This document shows positions 5,029 through 56,901 of a DNA stretch of 64,000 bases, in pieces. Where the stretch lies: positions 744,001-808,000 of the forward strand of contig JALMLS010000064.1 in assembly GCA_038496445.1 (NCBI GenBank). Reading direction: 5' to 3'. Below the pieces are notes generated by a model. The model did no database searches. It saw only the letters and a list, made by a program, of their open reading frames with translations, and had not been told where the DNA came from. Every line of letters starts with the position of its first letter. The stretch's first letter is position 1. A program made the translations under genes and the position numbers. The stretch is from Trichosphaerium sp. ATCC 40318. Taxonomy: Eukaryota > Protista > Tubulinea.

Positions 5029-6766
5029 ATGAGAACTATTACGAAGCGCTACAGAGCCCCAAAGAGTTTGCAGCTAACCAAGAAGCAAATTACTTCAATA
5101 CGCGAGAGTGATGGCTATATACATCACCACAGACGATCAATTGATAGAGTGGGGCGAGAATTACGTATTTTACACTTGGATGATTGGTACAAAGTTGACA
5201 CGAGACAAATTGTCAGACGGGGCGTGCGGGGAGTCCTGTATGTTATCAGAGTGTCTAATATGATTAATTATTGACGATGTTAGTGAATTTTACAACATGT
5301 CCATGTTAAACTGTTTGTCACACGTCTATCCTTCGTACACTTGGATTCCATGGCGTTTCAAGTACGCTAACGGCTTTCACAGCTATTACAATCTTCTAAC
5401 ACGCGCAAGGCACGTACCACCGAACTTTTGGAAGTACGACGACAATCGTCGAGAAAAACTAGAAGATATGGCACAAGAACATAATCTCAAGCACCTTGAT
5501 GATTGGTATGATGTATCTAATAGAGACGCAATAGCGTGGGGCGCTGGTGGAATCATGTGCGTTTCACAGAGCCGAGCTAGAAATTAAAACTAATTTTTAT
5601 TTTTATGTTTAGGGCGTACTTCAACATGTCCATTGCTGATGCTTTGGCACGTGTTTATCCCAGTCACAATTGGATACCGTGGCAGTTTGAGTACGCTTTT
5701 GGTATTAGTGTAGTTATGTTTACGCTCACGTTTAAATCAGTACATCAACAATAGATTGTTGGAGAGATTATGACCAACAACGGCTGAGATTTGATTTAAT
5801 TGCAAAGAGTCTCGGCTTGAAGCAGCTTGAAGATTGGTATCTTGTTGGACAACAGGATATTATAAGACATGATGAGTATGTCTTTATGTACGTGACAAGT
5901 TTTATCACGTGTTGATTAATCAGGACAATAGGAAGTATCATAATGGTTCTATAAGTTCGTGTTTGGCAGTTATTTATCCTAGCTACGATTGGAAACCTTG
6001 GAAGTTCACGTACACAAAACATGTTCCTTTGATTGTGTTAACATCTTATCGTTTACTAGTTGTTCTCCAAGAAGATTTTGGGATGATCTCAGTAACCAAC
6101 GGGATCTATTACATGCTATAGAAGAGGAGAACAATATAAAGACTGCTGATGAATGGCGTGGAATGCCATTACGTAAAGTTGAGCCTATAAAGGGCATGCT
6201 TCAATCAACGTATGCTCTTGGTTATTGCTTACTCGTAGTGAAACTAATTCTTTTATACATAGTTATGGTGGTTCGCTTCAGAAAGCACTAATCAATATTT
6301 ATGGCAATATGCCTTGGATGACTAAAGATTTCTACAAGAGTTTTTGGCAAATCGAAGATAACCAACGTGCTTTCTTGCTTAAAATAAAGAAAAACTTAGA
6401 AATAACATCGCCTAACATGTGGTACGTTAGAAGAGAATTAAAACCTTCGGTTACAATAACAATTCAATAACCTTCCGTGGAGTGGCGTTACCTAACTTCA
6501 TTATTACATAGGTATCGTGTATCACACAGAGAAATGATTAGAAATGGCGCAAGTGGGTTGTTCAGATATTGGCCACACGTGTTATCTCTTATTGAACCAA
6601 GAGTAGATTGGCAATGGGCTATTTTCTCATGGCAACGTAAAGGAGCGAAGCAGAGGTAAATTTTATTTGCAATGAACTACCAAGCGACTGTGTCCTCTTT
6701 TTTTAATTTTTTTTGTTTAGGGTCCTTATGCAACACCTCCATTATATGTTTCCCATAGTACTCTGA
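5029..6766 (+). CDS. ~70-aa 'DWY' tandem-repeat protein, paralog 1 (5 repeats, no nuclease domain)
   Basis: Hand-spliced exons give repeats centred on LDDWY, LDDWY, LEDWY, ADEWR and PNMWY, the first three followed by YP...W.PW.F. Ends KQR|VLMQHLHYMFPIVL* (TGA 6764-6766). Confidence 0.8.
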
Positions 6767-8953: not shown

Positions 8954-11323
8954 ATGCGCAAACGCCTTAATACTACGCGAAAAAGACTAACTAGTGCGTT
9001 TTACATTTCTATTTGGTGTAACAATTAAAATTTTAGATGGACAACGTATAATCAACCTTAGGGTAAAGGCTCAGCGGAAGAAAGCTCAATACGCGGTACA
9101 CGATATGAAGCTGCCAATCAATTACTTTTTAGTGTCTAATATTGCCTAAGGGAGCTCGCAAAGTATTTATTAAAGCGTTTACAGACGCTAAAAATCCTAA
9201 ACGGCTCGATGATAAGAAATTAGAGCGTATTGCCTGTAGTGCGAACACACACGTACCACGAGGATTCTGGGATCCGATTCAAAACCAAAAACAGATGTTT
9301 AACCTCGTTGGACAGAATTTGGGAATAAAAACACTCTGCGATTGGTATAAAGTGTCTTATAATGTTCTCATCACAACAGGGGCATCGGGTATAATTGCTA
9401 AGTGCGTATCAGCAACATACATGGGATTAATTCACAAACAAACCAAAAAAGTTTTTTGACACATTGCCTTTGACACTTATGCAGATATAATGGTTCGATA
9501 TCTTCTGTACTTGGTGCTTTATATCCTGAGTATGATTGGGAAGTATGGCGGTTCACGTACGCCTCAGAAAACGGAAAGCTTTCGATCGCTAATAAAACTA
9601 TAAGAGCGGCGCCTAGGCGTCATTGGGACTCTATTGATAATCGGAGGCACCGGTTTGATCTTGTTTGCGCTGAGCAAGGTATAAAGACACTTGATGATTG
9701 CTATAAGATAGGTTTTAAGGAGCTTTCTAAATGTGACATGCTGACGTTACTAAAAATGTATGTAGAAACTTTTGAGAAACTTTGGTTTTTTTTTATTATT
9801 TGTTCTTGAACACCTGTCATATTTAACAACCATTTTAGGTATGATAATTGCGTTGCAAAGGTTTTAGGAGAGCTTTTTCCTCAAAAAGAGTGGGATAATT
9901 CAAAATTCATGTGCGCGAGGACTTATCTTTGTTTTGTGATTCTCTTTTGGAAAACTAACTTTTCTTTTTGATTGATAGGGTTGTACCTCATGGGCACTGG
10001 AATAGTGAAGCTAATAGACTACGATGTTTAGATGATATGGCAAAAGAATTACGGCTACTAACTTGTGATGACTGGTATCGTGTTACGTATACCGACTTTG
10101 CAAAACTAGGACAACTATCGATTGTTGCAAGGTACAACAAAATGCCCATAACAAGCTTGTCTTTCTGTCTCTTTTTTTATTGACAATATCTTAACTTTTT
10201 AATAGATACAGCTCCACGTTTGAAGTAGTGCGCAGTATATTTCCTCACTATGATTGGAACCCAAAATTCTTCAAGCACGTGAAAATCACATGTTTTTCTG
10301 TGAAGATTAACACTTTTAATTTAACAGTGTACCGCCGCCTTCACATCTTATCAAAGGATATAGAGTATTAACAAATAAGATTGCTTCTAAAATACGTGTC
10401 TTCATGTTAGACGATTGGTATGATGTAAATCCTAAAGACATTTCTTTAAAGGGAGGTCGGCCAATCATCACAAGGTACTTTCTTTTTTTTTGGTTTTTGT
10501 TTTGTTGGCTCGTAGGCTTGCATTGCGCACTTTGGTTTTGTATAATTGTTAATCGTGCTATTGCTATAGGTTTAATTCATTGTATCAAGCAATGAGTGCA
10601 CTTTACACAGAACATAAATGGAAACCTTGGCGTTTTAAGTATGGACAAAAAGCTAAAGTTGATTCTTTAGTTGGATACAGGGAGACTCTTAATAATCTTG
10701 GTACAAAGTTTGGTGTTACTAAACGCGAAGATTGGTATTGGGTGTCTGCTAGAACACTAAGTAATACTGCAAAAGGCTTGACAGTACTGAATAAGTGAGT
10801 ACTTTTTTCAGGTTTTTTTAGCCTTCTTTTTTCTTTTCTAAGTTTTTCAAAAAGGTTTGGTGGGTCTATACGTCAAGCTTTGAATACAATATTTTCTGAA
10901 TATGAGTGGTCAAATGATAAGTTCGTGTAAGTGATAAATTTTATTTGTTGCGAGGAAAAGTAACGTAGAAAATTAGTCGTGATAGTTCAGGATATTGGCA
11001 AAATAATATGAACTGTATTAGTTTTATAAGAGAAATGGAAAATGCTTTTGGTATAGATAGTCCTCTTGCCTGGTACGTTAAAATATTTGAGTGTCATTAC
11101 ATTAGCTAAATAACGGTTTTTATTTTCAAGGCAACGTATTTCTTTCACCCAAATAGCAAGTGTTGGTGGTAGAGGTCTGATATCACATTGGCCTCAAGTT
11201 TTGTATAAGAATTACCCTGATATGGATTGGAAACCTTTTAAAAGTGCTGCAGCTGATAGGCCTCGTAAGCGCTCTGTACAACGTGTTCTTTTATTACATA
11301 CTAAACAGTGCTTTAATCTGTAA
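8954..11323 (+). CDS. 'DWY' tandem-repeat protein, paralog 2 (6 repeats, no nuclease domain)
   Basis: Repeats centred on LCDWY, LDDCY, CDDWY, LDDWY, REDWY and PLAWQ. Basic N-terminus MRKRLNTTRKRL. Ends KRSVQRVLLLHTKQCFNL* (TAA 11321-11323). Confidence 0.8.
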
Positions 11324-13630: not shown

Positions 13631-14000
13631 TACAATAGGGTATGTACTTAACAGCGTCATTATCTTAATGGGTACCTTGAAGGAGAGTACAAAGGTTGGT
13701 ACACTAATGACCAAATGAAAGAGAAGTGTTATTATGCAAAGGATAAAAAAACCGGAGAGTACAATCTCTATTACCCTGCAGGTCAACTATGGCAGCAGAC
13801 TTATTATGTTAAAGGTTTGCGTCAAGGAGAATACAAGTGTTGGTACCTTGAGACAGCATACTCTGTATTTCAAAGATAAAAGAGTGAAAAAGCAATGTTT
13901 TTATTTAAATGAGAAACGAGAAGGAGATTATCATTGTTGGTATTACACTGGCCAACTCAAGAGGCATCGTTATTATGTAGGTGGTGAAGAAAAGATTAAT
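13631..14000 (+). pseudogene. Decayed intronless MORN2/YwqK-type repeat gene (giant-virus- or bacteria-like)
   Basis: HYLNGYLEGEYKGWYTNDQMKEKCYYAKDKKTGEYNLYYPAGQLWQQTYYVKGLRQGEYKCWY, then a frame change to KQCFYLNEKREGDYHCWYYTGQLKRHRYY. In-frame TAA at 13649-13651. Confidence 0.65.
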
Positions 14001-14488
14001 GCTACTGAGCACTTTATGGGCCAGCATCATTTGTCACACTGGCAACGAATAATCACATGTTGTATAAAAATTACAACCTGCCACGTGACAGCTGACATCC
14101 ATCAATAAGGTTCGTGTTAAAGGGGATTGTTGCAGTGTTCTAATATCTTTGCACGTTCTTGTTATTTCCTTAAGTAAACGAGTAGTAAGCACCACTTGAT
14201 ACCCTAGATTTGACTAGCCTCATCATGCTGGAAAGCGGCTGTACACAGCAACGGAATAATCGATAGATAAATAAAAAAAAGAAAAATCAGCTCATGCATG
14301 CAACTATTTTTGCGGACAACTGCACTTTTGTCGTATCTATAAAGCACTACGCCAAAAGTGTATTAACACACTTGCTACCAAATTGAGATGCAACCTTACA
14401 CGATACATTTTAAGGAAGAATTTCAAAGACAGTCAAGATTGCTCTCTTTTCTTTTTGCAATCATGATGACGTTATTTATTTACTGTTT

Positions 14489-17400
14489 TCATCGATAACA
14501 ACGTACTATTGAATTAGCTTGGCTCCCTGTCGGTGTCATGATACCTCGCGATGGATTTTCTGTGTTTATGGTTAGTCACAATGACGCAGCATGAAATCCT
14601 TTTTTTCTGGTTTTTTTGTCACATACCTGAGTTTGGAAGAAGAGGATGACTTTTTGGAATCCTCAAAGGTGGTTTCCGCTTATCATACGTCATTTTAATA
14701 TCTGGTCGGAACTGGTTTATAGTAGATCCAATACTGTCAGCATCACCTTCCCAAGAATATGGTATAGGAACCAAGCAAAGTCCTGCAAAACAAATAAGGT
14801 TATTCTCTGAATATTTTTTATGTAGTTAGGCTTTGGGCGTACCATACTCGTCACATTTTTGTTGCTTTTCTGCATCTCGTACACTGAATATCATAGATGG
14901 CGCCACGTGAGCCATAACATCATGGTAGTGTTGCTCTCCTGTAGAAGAATGTAAAAACTAGAAAAAAGTCTAAAAGGAATACCTTGGTATTCAATTGCTA
15001 GATTGTGCTTTGGAATAAATATATCTACAGTCAATAAGGCTCCGCCACCTGAATCTCTAGATCCTATGGTATGTTCCTCTAAATGGGGTGTATCATTAGC
15101 AACAGTGGTTTATGGATTCTGTTTACCTTCCACAGGAACATCTGGTAAAAGTGTTTGAATGCAACGAAGAAGCTCCCTGTTTTAGTTTAGTAAATACACT
15201 ATAGTGTTTTTGTTTGGTTGTACCTCTGCCTGGCTTTCTTATTGAAGTATTTAAAGTTTGCCCATATCCATTTAGAATGGGGATAAAGAGATTTCAATGC
15301 GAAAGGAAAATATTTTAAAACACCTCCACCTCCGGCTTCTAACAGTTTTGATGAAGAAACGGCATACCTATATTTTCAAGGAGTAAATATTTTATAATAA
15401 TACTAGAAACTTTGTTTACCAGTCTTCAGGGTCTTGTACGTTCAAAGCAGTTTCAGTGCTCTTTAGGAAATTTGCAACATTGTACTTATCCTTCCAGTAT
15501 CCTGACACGTGAGCAGTCTCTTGTCTCCTTTATGAAGAAAATTAGAACTTTGAGAAGGAGGCGACATAAATCAGGAAAGATAAAAGTAGTTCACTTGCTT
15601 GTAAAGGAAGAGGTGATTGATCCATCTGTATTCATCGTATATCGCTTTTAGTGCACGAGATAACGAGTTATCATATCTTAGAGGTGGTCAATTAGATTCA
15701 GTCACATGATGATAGTTACCTTCCCATAATACCATAGCCAGCAGGAACTTTAATAACATGTTTTACTGACATGACATACCAATCAGATAGAACTTTGATA
15801 TTCAACTGTCTACTAATTTCGTCCATACCATCTCTTTGATGGCGTTTATGATGCCAATGGCCTTGCGGCATATTTCTAGTACATTTGTAATTAAAGAAGG
15901 CACAAAAGAGATGAACATTGAGGAGTAAAAGAACATACTTAAAGCTAGTGACACTCCAAGTTTTCTCTGGGTATATCGTTGATAGAGCTCGAAAAAGAGA
16001 GTTTGAGTACCTTTGCAACCGAGTTAGTTTGTCATTACAAATAATATATATGACGTACTTGTGAATAATTGCAGTGCCACCATATGCGATAATATCTCGA
16101 ACATTGGTTTTATACCAATCGTCAAAAACTTTAACAAGTAATGCTTTTCCAATCTCCTCAAATCGAGCTCTCTGATGATCCAAGTCAGCCCAATACCATC
16201 TTGGTGCTCTACCACAATTTTAAGAACATGTCATTAAAGCAGACAACTATTGTGCTAGCTAAGAATCGTACTTGAAGTGATTTGTATTCCATTTAAACGA
16301 AGGATACAGTTTACGTAAAATTTGAGGCATTGTTTTGTATCTAAGAGAGGGATTGTTAGTTTGATTGTGTTGGTTTTTTTTATGGTTTCACATGCTTCTG
16401 TACTATCATGTTAGCTCCCATTCCTATGATATCACTTGGTGTTACATCATACCAACCATCAAGTGTCTTTAAACCGAACTCATACGCGATGTCGTTCAAT
16501 TTTTCTCTTTGTACAGTTTTTGTTCCCCAATGCCTTGCAGGTATATATTTGAACTTCCACATAGCCCAATCATACTCGAATGTATCATTCAAAGCGTAAT
16601 ATATATTCTTGTACCTATACAATACTAATATAAATCACGTGATTCTAAGATACTCAACGTGAATGAAGAAAAACGCTGACGTACTTTGCATCTGGATTTA
16701 CGATTGCATCTAGTGGCGGTACTTCCTTAACTGAGTACCATCCATCCAGTGTCTTTAAATTTAATCTACGTGCATGCATGTTGAACCATTGTGATCTGCT
16801 TTCTCGTTGTATTTCTTCATCAAGAGCAATCCAGTTGTACATAGGATAAATCTTCTTCAAAGCACCTTTAAAAGATCCGTTGTACCTTTTGCGTATGAGC
16901 TTAATAACGGTTGTATGATGACGTACTTAACAAGTACACTTGCTATTTTCTTTATACCACTAGTAGCAACGTCATACCACATGTCGAATGTCTTAATGTT
17001 CTCAGTTTTACCAACACTATCAAAAAGTTCTCTTTGATTCACTACTTCAAACCAGTGATGTTGAGCAACGCGTCTATAATAGGTATAAGAATAATTTTTA
17101 TTTTCTTATCACGTGCTTAAACTTATGAAGACTAAGGTTGTATTCTGGGTACAGTGCTTGAACAGCCCTCGACAAAGAATGATTGTAACTGCATGACAAA
17201 GATTAAGAACAAACTGAGAATAGAGTTCCGTACTGACTAAGAACTCCTGCTCCACCAAGTTCCACTACATCTGTCCAAGATGCATTGTACCATCCATATA
17301 TGGTATCAATCTCTAGAGCTTTACCTATTCTATCAAAACACTCCCGCTGGTGAGCCTTGCTGTGAAAGTGACCGACAGGTATTTTGCTAAAATATTTTGA

Positions 17401-17895
17401 GTACAAAACTCTTTAGTTGGTTGTTTGTACTTGAACTTTGCAGGAAGCCATTGAAAGTCAGGGAATGTAGACTTTAACGTGCGAGACAAAGAGTTACCAT
17501 ACCTAGGAGGTACAAACATGCATTAGAGTTGCGTAATTTAACAGCTATTTCATACTTGGTAAATATGCTCCCACCGCCAATAAATATCAGTAATTTGAGC
17601 GAAACTGTGTACCTTAGGGTATATTACGTAACAATACAGTCAGTTGAATGTGTACCATCCATCTAACGTTTTGATATTTAGGTATTGCCCGTATTTGTTG
17701 AAGTGAGCCTGCTGAGACGCTATTTCTTGAAGTTGCCATGTGTCTTGTACTGATGTGAAAACCTTTGCGCGTTCTGTAGCTCATATAAATATTCTTGTAC
17801 GTTACGGTGTACATACGTTCTGTTGGAGTGTATTGTGAGCGTCGGTGGCGTCTTGTACACTTCCGGTTAATTGCAAGTACATTTGCCACTTTCAT
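14489..17895 (-). CDS. 'DWY' tandem-repeat protein, paralog 3 (8 repeats) with C-terminal PD-(D/E)XK (RAP/DUF559/Vsr-like) nuclease domain
   Basis: Repeats centred on LDGWY, IYGWY, FDMWY, LDGWY, LDGWY, FDDWY, LSDWY and PEDWY. Spliced C-terminus: QR|ELLRCIQTLLPDVPVE|EEHT...LTVDIFIPKHNLAIEYQG|EQHYH...RDAEKQQKCDEYG|LCLVPIPYSW. Confidence 0.85.
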
Positions 17896-55214: not shown

Positions 55215-56901
55215 TCATGTTGGAAATAATGCAAATGTGCATCGCGAGAGCCACCTACGCATTATTGTTAGCATCTCAGGTATTATAACGATGCATGCCA
55301 TTGCTCTGAACGCTTCATTCTCTCCTCTATATGACTTGGTCGTTCGTAAAACACTTTTTTATGTTTTTCTGCGTTACGAAGAGAATCCAGGACATCATTC
55401 CACGAAGACTGCAACATAACGCAACCAAGACGTCGTAGCTGATCAGACGATACTCGTTTACACTCATCAATAGTATTGAGATCCATCTTGTCTTTGACAT
55501 ACTCAACGAACTCTCGAATATTCTGTTGTGATTTCCAAAAGTTACGAGAAATACAGGCTATTATTAAACAAAAGATTGAGCAAAATGATATCAAGAGTAG
55601 GTCACGTACTGAATTTCCAAGGTATCCAATTGTATTGAGGGTATAACGAAACAAGTAAATCCTTATAGGAGTTCATACCACAGCTTCTAAATTCAAAGTA
55701 AATTAAAACGAGACGACACTTTTTTTTTTGATAAAACTCTACCGGACTACAGCTCCTGCACGATCAATTGATCCAAAATCAGATGCTGTTACATTATACC
55801 AATCATTAATTTGCCGTATATTCAGTTTTTGTTCAGCCTAGGGATCACCAAGTGAGCAAGATAGGTCGAGATGTAAAAAAGATATTCGTACATATCGAAT
55901 AAATGAGCGTAAATTCTCCTGTTCACTCCAAAAATATCGTCTAGTAGCAGCTTTGATAAAGTAAATAAAAACTCCCTTAAACGTAAATCATACTGAATTT
56001 CCAAGGTATCCATACATAGTCACAGTATATGACCTCAAGTAATCGGCCCAAAGAACCACCGTAGTAGTGACTATCATGAAAAAAACCCGTTAGCTTCAAA
56101 GAAATAAAGATCGGCAGGTCAACTCTACCAAGAAACGTACTTTATAAGACGAGAAGCACCCATATCATATAATTCACGCACGTGAACTTTATACCAATCA
56201 CTAACTTTTTTTATATTAAGTTCAGCTTCGACCTATTTTTGGCGTGAGTTTTACAAAAGAAAAAGGTTAAAAAGAGAAAAGATAGAATTGTCCTCCATTT
56301 TTATGCGATTGAGTTGTTTAGTAAGTACCTCTCTTATGTATATTGTCTGGTTGCTTAAACTTTGCCAAAAATGTGTCGGTACACCCACTACAAAAGAGAA
56401 TTTTTTGTTAATTCCAAAAAAGCCAATTTTGACACTTTTTTTCCCAAAGTGTCAAAAAAAAAGTCGTACGGAATTTCCATGGTAGCCATTTGTACATTGG
56501 GTAGTGATGTTTAATAACATTTTGAAGGGAAGTGTCATAATTTCTAATATTTTCAAAAAGTTAGGCTTTTGTCGTTTATTTCGTACTCATAGCTCATTAT
56601 TCGTACCGAATTATCTTGTAACCGAGGTGACCACCTTTTCTGAAGGTTTTTTGACTGATTTGATACCAACCGTCAAGTGTTTTTAATCCTAGACGTTTTT
56701 CTGTCTTTTAAGAGTAAGTTGACGCATTTTTATGGTTAATGTACGTCGTAAATGAAGTCTCGTTCGTCTTGTTGTGCTATTTTGTATTTAAAGTCCTCAG
56801 CCGCTCTTCGCATCTTATTATGTAAGTATTGTGCGGTTTAGCGATTGTTTACTAACCTTTTGAGTATGAGCTCGTTCTACGCGTTTTATTACGTTTGCCA
56901 T
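55215..56901 (-). CDS. 'DWY' tandem-repeat protein, paralog 4 (4 repeats, no nuclease domain)
   Basis: Repeats centred on LDGWY, VSDWY, INDWY and IDECK, the first three with W.PWKF. A GC-AG intron at 55255-55298 gives the ending KRSEQW|WLSRCTFALFPT*; if unspliced, the ORF ends at 55283. Confidence 0.75.

What the first reader, a model, noticed from the sequence alone, without database searches (positions are those of the whole stretch)
14489..17895. Tandem ~70-aa repeat array fused to a PD-(D/E)XK/RAP-like nuclease: candidate new modular nucleic-acid-targeting system
Seen: hand-splicing gives eight copies of a Trp/Tyr-anchored repeat (P..HW....QR..FD.IG..L.IKTLDGWY.V....I...GG.GI...Y..SL...L...YP...W....F). 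They are followed, across four short exons the ORF track misses (about 14720-15177), by LTVDIFIPKHNLAIEYQGEQHY...RDAEKQQKCDEYGLCLVPIPYSW. Established: D-x(9)-E-x-[QD]-G-x-x-H followed by RD..K...C...G..L..IPY is the signature of Vsr/DUF559/RAP-type restriction-endonuclease-like folds. Repeat-plus-nuclease layouts (OPR-RAP, FASTK-RAP, PPR-SMR, engineered TALE-FokI) read sequence module by module. The repeat here is not PPR (35 aa), OPR (38 aa), TALE (34 aa), PUF or mTERF, and I cannot assign it to a named family. Inference: each repeat may be a DNA/RNA-reading unit, with the variable residues after DWY.V and around GG.G...Y..S setting specificity and the intact D/E/H residues cutting the target.
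Basis: partly seen in the sequence, partly recalled or inferred. Interest (0 to 1): 0.92.

Follow-up and report, generated by a model that had tools for sequence, protein, structure and literature searches.

The report
Amoeba repeat-array protein with Vsr-type nuclease
This is a real, expressed protist gene whose protein strings eight copies of an unstudied 73-residue five-helix module onto an apparently active DNA-repair/homing-type nuclease; it belongs to a very large uncharacterised family that may aim a nuclease at nucleic acid, but no recognition code is shown.

Summary
On the minus strand, 17895-14489, I built a 21-exon gene (785 aa). It has a basic N-terminus, eight diverged 73-aa repeats and a C-terminal nuclease domain. 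Spliced cDNA contigs confirm 12 introns by joints and the last one through loose ends. These include every junction joining repeats 5-8 to the nuclease exons, and two GC-AG introns.

The nuclease models confidently as a PD-(D/E)XK core. Its nearest solved folds are a Toxoplasma mitoribosomal protein C-terminal domain, NGO0050, I-Bth0305I and Vsr (Z 9-9.7), then the FASTKD4 RAP module (Z 7.9). The family's near-invariant D, E, Q, G, H, D, K residues are all present here.

The repeat models at pLDDT 96 as five helices per unit. It has no relative among solved or viral structures. It resembles predicted models of Pfam DUF4046, which it matches only below threshold. The family is huge (1541 clusters at 50% identity; Amoebozoa and Heterolobosea), and I found no literature on it.

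Targeting by the repeats therefore remains an inference.

This scan had already noted the same family many times on other DNA of this genome.

The parts
14489..17895 (-). Whole gene: 21 exons, 20 introns of 41-77 nt, CDS 2358 nt, 785 aa
   Evidence: Hand-spliced model. 12 introns confirmed by cDNA joints and the last one by loose ends.
17748..17895 (-). N-terminal 35 aa before repeat 1 (exon 1, intron 1 and the start of exon 2). Basic and acid-poor (9 K/R, 1 D/E, pI 11.7). Possible organelle presequence or nuclear localisation signal.
   Evidence: No targeting predictor was run and there is no transcript cover here.
17433..17747 (-). Repeat 1 (aa 36-108), with introns at repeat positions 30/31, about 49 and 73
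   Evidence: HMM E 8e-20
17073..17382 (-). Repeat 2 (aa 111-182)
   Evidence: HMM E 6e-23
16822..17069 (-). Repeat 3 (aa 184-252)
   Evidence: HMM E 1e-18
16551..16812 (-). Repeat 4 (aa 256-319), the most degenerate; it lacks the GG motif
   Evidence: HMM E 2e-8; alignment
16274..16544 (-). Repeat 5 (aa 322-393); contains GC-AG intron 16395-16341
   Evidence: HMM E 2e-21; joint with CT..GC ends in cDNA contigs
15941..16207 (-). Repeat 6 (aa 395-467)
   Evidence: HMM E 6e-25; both of its introns confirmed
15601..15871 (-). Repeat 7 (aa 470-545); followed by GC-AG intron 15598-15528
   Evidence: HMM E 2e-23; the 71-nt skip is seen in three runs
15253..15508 (-). Repeat 8 (aa 553-620), a divergent junction repeat next to the nuclease. 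Its best match in relative P0004 is that protein's last repeat.
   Evidence: HMM E 6e-19; identity matrix
14679..15228 (-). Vsr/DUF2726/RAP-like PD-(D/E)XK nuclease domain (aa 629-745) spread over four exons. Conserved residues: D665, E676, Q678, G679, H682, D700, K703, P718, W721.
   Evidence: Family alignment and column counts. Model of the closest relative's domain. Fold matches. All four introns here are confirmed.
14489..14678 (-). Non-conserved C-terminal tail (aa 746-785) including the last exon 14559-14489 and the stop codon
   Evidence: The last intron is supported by loose ends of cDNA contigs.

Best explanation
This is a nuclear, intron-rich, expressed gene of an amoeboid protist. 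It encodes a nucleic-acid-directed nuclease in three parts.

1. A short basic N-terminus, which probably sends the protein to an organelle (most likely the mitochondrion) or to the nucleus.
2. Eight diverged copies of a 73-aa five-helix module. The module is DUF4046-like, and conserved Trp/Tyr/Phe residues probably make up its hydrophobic core. In a close relative these modules pack into a rigid, net-basic array.
3. A Vsr/homing-endonuclease-type PD-(D/E)XK domain carrying the full Asp/His/Asp catalytic set, which hydrolyses a phosphodiester bond.

Proposed mechanism: the array binds a long stretch of nucleic acid, more likely DNA than RNA. Each module would contact several nucleotides, in the manner of a helix-turn-helix or Myb-type unit rather than one base per repeat. 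A specialised last repeat holds the nuclease at a fixed position so that it nicks or cuts nearby.

Shown: the gene structure and splicing of its 3' two-thirds, the repeat array, the nuclease fold, conservation of the catalytic residues, and the size of the family.
Inferred: binding of nucleic acid by the repeats, the substrate, the cell compartment and catalytic activity.
For: Transcript: the repeats and nuclease are joined in one spliced cDNA.

Architecture: the repeat-plus-nuclease layout recurs in 54 of the 150 best family representatives. The family has 1541 clusters at E<=1e-3.

Nuclease:
- The AF2 model has pLDDT 86 and alpha-beta-beta-beta-alpha-beta-alpha topology.
- VIA Z scores are 9.7 (NGO0050, 3hrl), 9.5 (I-Bth0305I), 9.3 and 9.0 (Vsr), 9.7 (T. 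gondii mitoribosomal protein) and 7.9 (FASTKD4 RAP).
- D, E, G, H, D and K are 92-100% conserved across 48 relatives, and all are present in the window protein.
- By motif order they correspond to Vsr D51/H64/H69/D97 as described in PMC3239194.

Repeats:
- A three-repeat model has pLDDT 96 and pTM 0.81, so the inter-repeat packing is confident.
- The array has pI 9.4 and net charge +20; the family median pI is 8.6.
- Two basic positions are conserved in every repeat: R/K13 at 79% and K/R72 at 78%.
- Nine of the variable positions (33, 35, 36, 40, 42, 45, 46, 49, 50) have only 3-11% acidic residues and are largely basic or polar.

Lean towards DNA:
- The nearest predicted structures are viral and phage homing-type nucleases and DUF2726 (TM 0.57-0.66).
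- Family member P0026 adds a Lig E-type DNA ligase module.

Targeting: many family members have basic, acid-poor N-termini.
Against: No binding or cleavage data exist for any member of the family.

The repeat fold has no solved relative that binds nucleic acid. The best hits are TetR helix-turn-helix domains at Z 3-4, which is within noise.

The variable positions show broad alphabets and no code. Exposed helix faces are variable in any repeat protein.

Thirty of the 150 family arrays are acidic, with pI below 6.5.

Three nuclease-less paralogues in this same window show that the array can function without the nuclease.

RAP-type relatives of this nuclease fold serve as RNA-binding or ribosomal proteins, so an intact fold alone does not prove cutting.

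The ligase module of P0026 lacks the KxDG lysine.

The N-terminus could be a nuclear localisation signal. The 5' third of the gene model has no transcript support.
Confidence: 0.45

Rival explanations
1. It is an organellar RNA-processing or RNA-stabilising factor, the amoebozoan/heterolobosean counterpart of OPR-RAP, HPR-RAP and FASTK proteins. The helical array would bind a specific mitochondrial transcript or rRNA fragment, and the RAP-like domain would cleave RNA or simply anchor it.
For: - The layout matches: a helical array followed by a C-terminal Vsr/RAP-fold domain.
- The joint-top structural match is the C-terminal domain of a Toxoplasma mitoribosomal protein (Z 9.7), and the FASTKD4 RAP module scores Z 7.9.
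- The family shows the large, fast-diverging paralogue expansion typical of organellar RNA binders.
- N-termini resemble presequences.
- A divergent member (P0050) hits Pfam RAP at E 9e-4.
Against: - Pfam RAP matches only 1 of 51 domains, against 34 of 51 for DUF2726.
- The nearest predicted structures are DNA homing-type nucleases.
- Relatives are fused to a DNA ligase module.
- The five-helix 73-aa module is unlike the helical-hairpin solenoids of known RNA readers.
Confidence: 0.28
2. It is a self/non-self or conflict gene: a fast-evolving family of DNA nucleases derived from viral or phage homing-type enzymes and used against foreign DNA such as giant viruses or mobile elements. The variable arrays would act as diversified recognition modules, and the nuclease-less paralogues as decoys or regulators.
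For: - The nearest predicted structures to the nuclease come from Nucleocytoviricota and phages.
- Paralogues are only about 30% identical, with 3-25 repeats.
- Nuclease-less paralogues are clustered in the same window.
- The hosts are amoebae, which giant viruses commonly infect (established knowledge).
Against: - Many members have N-termini that look like mitochondrial presequences.
- The repeat model has no viral relatives and no phage or plasmid sequence matches.
- There is no evidence of induction or of diversifying selection.
Confidence: 0.12
3. The array is a protein-protein or structural scaffold, and the nuclease acts without sequence guidance or is non-catalytic. The resemblance to guided nucleases would then be only architectural.
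For: - No nucleic-acid-binding fold could be assigned to the repeat.
- Weak Pfam echoes are of SAM-like and CH domains, which often mediate protein contacts.
- One fifth of family arrays are acidic.
- Nuclease-less paralogues exist.
Against: - The catalytic residues are almost perfectly conserved.
- The array is basic, with conserved Arg/Lys in each repeat and acid-depleted variable positions.
- The array is consistently fused to nucleic-acid enzymes.
Confidence: 0.15

Closest known systems
Vsr / DUF559 / DUF2726 clade of PD-(D/E)XK nucleases, including the EDxHD homing endonuclease I-Bth0305I (PDB 1vsr, 1cw0, 3hrl, 3r3p)
   Same: - Same core fold (Z 9.0-9.7).
- Same order of conserved Asp ... 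Glu-x-(Gln/His)-Gly-x-x-His ... Arg-Asp-x-x-Lys residues, corresponding to Vsr D51/H64/H69/D97 (PMC3239194).
- 34 of 51 family domains give weak DUF2726 hits, and one member (P0167) passes the Pfam cut-off.
- Like I-Bth0305I, the nuclease sits C-terminal to a separate helical targeting region.
   Different: - It is eukaryotic, nuclear-encoded and intron-rich.
- The window branch stays below every Pfam cut-off.
- Gln usually replaces the His/Asn/Asp at the second polar position.
- It has no Vsr zinc site or intercalating Trp pair that I could identify.
- The partner domain is a 73-aa repeat array, not NUMOD/HTH motifs.
Helical-repeat plus RAP proteins of organelles (FASTK/FASTKD4, Chlamydomonas OPR-RAP, apicomplexan HPR/RAP mitoribosomal proteins)
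   Same: - The layout is a helical array followed by a C-terminal Vsr-like/RAP fold.
- Fold matches are Z 9.7 (T. gondii mitoribosomal protein) and Z 7.9 (FASTKD4 RAP).
- The families are large.
- N-termini resemble presequences.
   Different: - The repeat is a five-helix 73-aa unit, not a 34-40-aa helical hairpin.
- Pfam RAP is essentially unmatched (1 of 51 domains at E 0.03).
- The catalytic set here is fully conserved.
- Relatives are fused to a DNA ligase module.
Pfam DUF4046 (PF13255), an uncharacterised family
   Same: - The three-repeat model superposes on ESM-Atlas clusters named DUF4046 (TM 0.74/0.65 over 219 of 222 residues, and 0.69/0.49).
- Several family members give weak PF13255 hits (E 0.011-0.025).
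- Two hits (P0157, P0158) carry a precomputed PF13255 label.
   Different: - All sequence matches are below the gathering score (15.6-16.7 bits against 22.8).
- DUF4046 proper is reported mainly from bacteria (Bacillota) as proteins of about 260-330 aa without the nuclease.
- No paper mentions it, so the name adds no function.
TALE, PPR and PUF modular readers
   Same: Tandem, diverged helical repeats with conserved scaffold positions and variable exposed positions. In engineered TALE-FokI, and in some natural PPR proteins, such arrays are fused to a nuclease.
   Different: - The module is twice as long, with five helices.
- No restricted-alphabet code positions are seen.
- There is no sequence or fold similarity.
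- One repeat per base is geometrically implausible.

Membership tests
PD-(D/E)XK superfamily, Vsr/DUF559/DUF2726 clade | Alpha-beta-beta-beta-alpha-beta core fold similar to Vsr, NGO0050 and I-Bth0305I | tested here: met
   AF2 model of the closest relative's domain (P0004:534-690, whose alignment includes the window exons): pLDDT 86, topology H-E-E-E-H-E-H. VIA Z 9.7 for 3hrl, 9.5 for 3r3p, 9.3 and 9.0 for Vsr. Foldseek E 1.7e-3 for 1vsr.
PD-(D/E)XK superfamily, Vsr/DUF559/DUF2726 clade | Catalytic Asp (Vsr D51), His (H69) and second Asp (D97) retained | tested here: met
   D42 is conserved in 47/48 relatives, H59 in 48/48 and D78 in 48/48. The window protein has D665, H682 and D700. The equivalence to Vsr residues is by motif order and PMC3239194, not by a residue-level superposition.
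PD-(D/E)XK superfamily, Vsr/DUF559/DUF2726 clade | Passes a curated Pfam model (Vsr, DUF559 or DUF2726) | tested here: inconclusive
   34 of 51 domains hit DUF2726, but the best E-value is 2e-4 and they are below the cut-off. Member P0167 passes (27.9 bits against 24.7). The window's single exons are too short to score.
RAP domain (PF08373) | Match to the Pfam RAP model | tested here: not met
   1 of 51 domains at E 0.031. The divergent member P0050 scores E 9e-4, below the cut-off.
RAP domain (PF08373) | Fold like a solved RAP module | tested here: met
   FASTKD4 FAST1-FAST2-RAP (9gek): Z 7.9 over 108 residues. C-terminal domain of T. gondii mitoribosomal proteins: Z 8.6-9.7.
Pfam DUF4046 (PF13255) | Sequence score above the gathering cut-off (22.8 bits) | tested here: not met
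   P0004 repeats score 15.6 bits (E 0.025). P0157 scores 16.7 bits (E 0.011). Only 3 of 120 three-repeat segments match at E<=1.
Pfam DUF4046 (PF13255) | Same fold as DUF4046 proteins | tested here: met
   Atlas clusters with PF13255 in 55% and 100% of members: TM 0.74/0.65 and 0.69/0.49 over 219 aligned residues. Both sides are predicted models.
PPR / OPR / TPR / TALE / PUF / mTERF | Repeat of about 34-40 aa built from a helical hairpin (or the family's own Pfam model) | tested here: not met
   The period is 66-80 aa with five helices per unit. None of these Pfam families appears in the scan of 10 full-length relatives or among the 25 most frequent families listed for 120 segments.
Annexin repeat (about 70 aa, five helices) | Structural superposition on annexins | tested here: not met
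   The best Foldseek hit, alpha-14 giardin, has E 0.046 but TM 0.25 and rmsd 14 A. On re-alignment no annexin reaches the listed rows, and only six chains reach Z 2.
Homing-endonuclease-associated repeat (PF18780 HNH_repeat) | Fold or sequence similarity to the repeat | tested here: inconclusive
   Atlas cluster with PF18780 in 100% of members: TM 0.40/0.22 over 147 residues at rmsd 5.3 A. The family is not among the 25 most frequent Pfam hits listed. No profile-profile comparison was possible.

The most novel reading that the evidence does not exclude
The 73-aa five-helix module is a new, natural, modular nucleic-acid-recognition scaffold. Arrays of different repeat order would specify different long DNA (or RNA) targets in amoebozoan and heterolobosean organelles or nuclei, and would position an active Vsr-type nickase. 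In some paralogues a Lig E module is also present, giving a protein-only cut (and reseal) system with a decipherable recognition rule.
Probability: 0.2. Interest if true: 0.9.

Novelty: new variant of a known kind. Interest (0 to 1): 0.6.

Why it matters
Helical-repeat arrays joined to a Vsr/RAP-fold domain are known ways of aiming activity at organellar nucleic acids. Every known reader (PPR, OPR, HPR, TALE, PUF) uses short helical hairpins.

This family is different in three respects. It uses a 73-aa five-helix unit with no solved relative. It keeps a fully conserved catalytic set. It is very large (more than 1500 clusters at 50% identity) and spans two distant protist supergroups.

If the arrays bind defined sequences, the family would be a new protein scaffold for sequence recognition. 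It might also explain some of the unusual mitochondrial genome or RNA biology of amoebae. If they do not, it is still a large, unannotated family for which Pfam lacks a fitting model.

Tried and rejected
- Pfam on single exons: nothing, the exons are too short.
- An exon-level alignment of the repeats as a profile: misaligned, so I searched with one 72-aa exon instead.
- Sequence profiles against the PDB: no relatives for the repeat or the nuclease.
- Repeat model against solved structures by Foldseek, by VIA on all representatives and by VIA re-alignment. The best were annexin/giardin (TM 0.25) and TetR helix-turn-helix domains (Z 3-4). I rejected these as noise.
- Repeat model against viral predicted structures: nothing.
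- tblastn of three repeats against phage and plasmid records: no match.
- Region-restricted homologue search with the nuclease domain: only one extra protein.
- Myb_Rap1: relative P0001 exceeds the whole-sequence cut-off (44 bits) only by summing 11 weak about-20-residue matches to the YP.H.W..W motif, with no significant single domain. I rejected it as a local motif echo.
- SAM-like and CH domain hits: weak, and present in a minority of members.
- NCBIfam: no model for the repeat.
- Mutual information between repeat positions: the top pairs (69-71, 28-66, 16-58) look like packing contacts, and no coupled code positions emerged.
- Literature searches (DUF4046; DUF2726; EDxHD; helical repeat + Amoebozoa + RAP; Lig E + Amoebozoa; helical repeat + Acanthamoeba/Physarum): no description of this family.
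- One literature call failed on syntax.
Full report
1. WHAT IS IN THE SEQUENCE

The window has about 37% G+C. Its open reading frames are broken into short pieces, as in an intron-rich eukaryote.

I anchored on the repeat-like peptides in the three minus-strand frames. I then listed the GT/GC..AG introns that keep the frame open. This gave a 21-exon gene from 17895 to 14489. After one correction from transcript data it has a 2358-nt CDS and encodes 785 aa with a single terminal stop. Introns are 41-77 nt long.

2. TRANSCRIPT EVIDENCE

Three public runs hold parts of the stretch. Contigs of two small runs, which come from one sample and one study, lie on 16832-14489. They skip exactly the predicted introns at 12 joints: 16684-16615, 16395-16341, 16271-16209, 16058-16011, 15938-15876, 15719-15677, 15598-15528, 15419-15368, 15223-15177, 15126-15079, 14982-14939 and 14842-14783.

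Loose ends at 14627 and 14567 read into the neighbouring exon, which supports the last intron, 14626-14560. One loose end carries what I recognise, from my own knowledge, as a SMART cDNA adapter, so these runs are cDNA.

Two introns are GC-AG. One of them (15598-15528, 71 nt) replaced the 77-nt GT-AG intron I had first chosen.

The seven introns and the start codon in 16883-17895 have no transcript cover.

3. THE REPEATS

Eight WY-anchored units occur with periods of 66-80 aa. An HMM rebuilt from 883 repeats of family members scores them at E 6e-25 to 2e-8. The repeats are 17-41% identical to one another, so they are old and not homogenised.

All 15 introns inside the array are phase 2, and their positions recur:
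- at repeat position about 49/50 in repeats 1-7;
- at the repeat end in repeats 1, 2, 5, 6 and 7;
- between W31 and Y32 in repeats 1 and 8.

From this I infer that the array grew by duplication of a two-exon unit.

Elsewhere in the window the HMM finds three further arrays: plus strand 5122-6431, plus strand 9256-10924, and minus strand 55611-56704. None has the nuclease domain, which occurs only in this gene.

4. THE FAMILY

A phmmer search with one 72-aa exon against 1.84 billion representative proteins found 1541 clusters at E<=1e-3 and 411 at E<=1e-10. The best 150 carry 3-25 repeats. Of these, 54 end in the same nuclease domain, and at least one more (P0050) has a divergent version of it.

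Named sources include:
- an MMETSP transcriptome (P0004, the closest relative, 32% identical over 669 aa);
- Heterolobosea sp. BB2;
- Cavostelium apophysatum;
- Copromyxa protea;
- Physarum polycephalum.

Atlas clusters of this family are labelled Evosea, Tubulinea and Discosea. No close orthologue of the window protein was found.

Earlier notes of this scan report the same family many times on other pieces of this genome and call the organism a marine amoeba. I did not test the organism's identity.

5. THE NUCLEASE DOMAIN

An alignment of 48 relatives plus the three window exons shows the following conservation:
- D42 in 47/48;
- P46 in 45/48;
- E53 in 46/48;
- Y54 in 47/48;
- position 55 is Gln in 39, His in 8 and Asn in 1;
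- G56 in 48/48;
- H59 in 48/48;
- D78 in 48/48;
- K81 in 44/48;
- C85 in 43/48.

The window protein has D665, E676, Q678, G679, H682, D700 and K703.

AlphaFold2 on this alignment, with the P0004 domain as target, gives pLDDT 86, pTM 0.80 and alpha-beta-beta-beta-alpha-beta-alpha topology. The best structural matches are:

| Match | Z |
|---|---|
| Toxoplasma mitoribosomal protein, C-terminal domain | 9.7 |
| NGO0050 (3hrl) | 9.7 |
| I-Bth0305I (3r3p) | 9.5 |
| Vsr (1cw0 / 1vsr) | 9.3 / 9.0 |
| FASTKD4 RAP module (9gek) | 7.9 |

Generic PD-(D/E)XK enzymes follow at Z 5-7.

At the sequence level, 34 of 51 domains weakly match Pfam DUF2726 and one matches RAP. One family member, P0167, passes the DUF2726 cut-off. 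The published classification places Vsr, DUF559 and DUF2726 in one clade and RAP in a neighbouring one (PMC3424549).

The I-Bth0305I paper equates its D196, N208, H213 and D222 with Vsr D51, H64, H69 and D97 (PMC3239194). By motif order these correspond to the family's D42, Q55, H59 and D78. This mapping is my inference.

Among predicted structures, the nearest neighbours are proteins of giant viruses and phages. They include clusters called homing nuclease, DUF723/CapR/NUMOD1 and DUF2726 (TM 0.57-0.66).

6. THE REPEAT FOLD

A three-repeat segment of P0004, modelled with 120 aligned family segments, gives pLDDT 96.1 and pTM 0.81. Each unit has five helices.

I found no relative in any of these searches:
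- solved structures by Foldseek (best alpha-14 giardin, E 0.046, TM 0.25);
- exhaustive VIA alignment (best Z 4.0, TetR helix-turn-helix, 58 residues);
- VIA re-alignment of the Foldseek hits (best Z 3.1);
- viral models;
- PDB sequences.

In the ESM Atlas the model superposes on clusters automatically named DUF4046 (TM 0.74/0.65 and 0.69/0.49). It superposes only weakly on a PF18780 homing-endonuclease-associated-repeat cluster (TM 0.40/0.22).

Pfam DUF4046 itself is matched only below its cut-off, and no paper mentions it. So the repeat is best described as a distant, expanded eukaryotic relative of an uncharacterised family.

7. DOES IT LOOK LIKE A NUCLEIC-ACID READER?

For:
- The array is basic (pI 9.4, net +20), and the family median pI is 8.6.
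- Every repeat conserves a basic residue at position 13 (79%) and at position 72 (78%).
- The most variable positions are 36, 40, 56, 45, 49 and 37. They fall on the i, i+1, i+4, i+5 faces of helices 3-5.
- Positions 33, 35, 36, 40, 42, 45, 46, 49 and 50 are depleted in acidic residues (3-11%) and are largely basic or polar.
- The family is fused to nucleic-acid enzymes. Besides the nuclease, member P0026 carries a Lig E-type DNA ligase module (PDB 4d05, E 2e-12; NCBIfam PRK09125, E 2e-28). Its KxDG lysine is replaced, however.

Against:
- The alphabets at the variable positions are broad.
- The mutual-information peaks look like packing contacts, so no code is visible.
- Thirty of the 150 arrays are acidic.
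- Nuclease-less paralogues exist.
- A 73-aa unit cannot read one base per repeat. If it reads at all, each unit must cover several nucleotides.

Compartment: in 56 full-length relatives the stretch before the first repeat has a median of 5 K/R and 1.5 D/E, and many look like mitochondrial presequences. The window protein's first 35 residues have 9 K/R and 1 D/E. No predictor was run, and a nuclear signal is equally possible for this protein.

8. VERDICT

The assignment of the nuclease fold is confirmed. The claim that the repeat has no named family is nearly right, since the only link is to DUF4046, which is uncharacterised. The mechanistic inference remains a reasonable hypothesis without direct support.

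I rank the readings as follows:
- a nucleic-acid-directed nuclease, leaning to DNA: 0.45;
- an organellar RNA factor of the RAP type: 0.28;
- a scaffold or unguided enzyme: 0.15;
- a conflict or defence nuclease: 0.12.

In kind, it is a new variant of the helical-array-plus-PD-(D/E)XK design. The same family was already reported repeatedly by this scan on other DNA of this genome, so this locus adds another intact, transcript-supported member rather than a new discovery.

Noticed in passing
window 5122-6431 (+), 9256-10924 (+), 55611-56704 (-): Three further arrays of the same repeat (about 5, 5 and 3 units), with none of the nuclease domain detectable anywhere else in the window. They are nuclease-less paralogues clustered with the full-length gene.
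   Followed up: partly
window 16395-16341 and 15598-15528 (-): Two GC-AG introns in one gene, both confirmed by cDNA joints. Gene finders that allow only GT-AG would mis-splice here, as my first model did at the second one.
   Followed up: yes
window 17655-15368 (-), introns 2-15: All introns inside the repeat array are phase 2 and sit at three recurring repeat positions (about 30/31, 49/50 and 72/73). This implies growth of the array by duplication of an exon pair, followed by loss of two introns (the fused exons 16885-16685 and 16614-16396).
   Followed up: yes
window 13715-14108 (+): Neighbouring plus-strand ORFs with YY/GxY motifs give a weak MORN_2 match (E 0.003, below the cut-off). This is probably part of a MORN-repeat gene that converges on the 3' end of this gene.
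   Followed up: partly
P0026 (family member, 854 aa), residues 568-854: The repeat-nuclease protein continues into a Lig E-type DNA ligase module. The motif-I lysine (KxDG) is not present: the segment reads ..RVSGIR.. there, so the ligase is probably inactive.
   Followed up: partly
P0001 (family member, 975 aa): It exceeds the Pfam Myb_Rap1 whole-sequence cut-off (44 bits against 27.1) purely by summing weak 20-residue matches in 11 repeats. Automatic annotation could mislabel such proteins as Rap1 Myb proteins.
   Followed up: partly
window 15324-15622, run X1: A third run holds short contigs over this stretch, including one unspliced contig with 7 substitutions and 5 indels. It may come from a related strain or species, or from a paralogue.
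   Followed up: no
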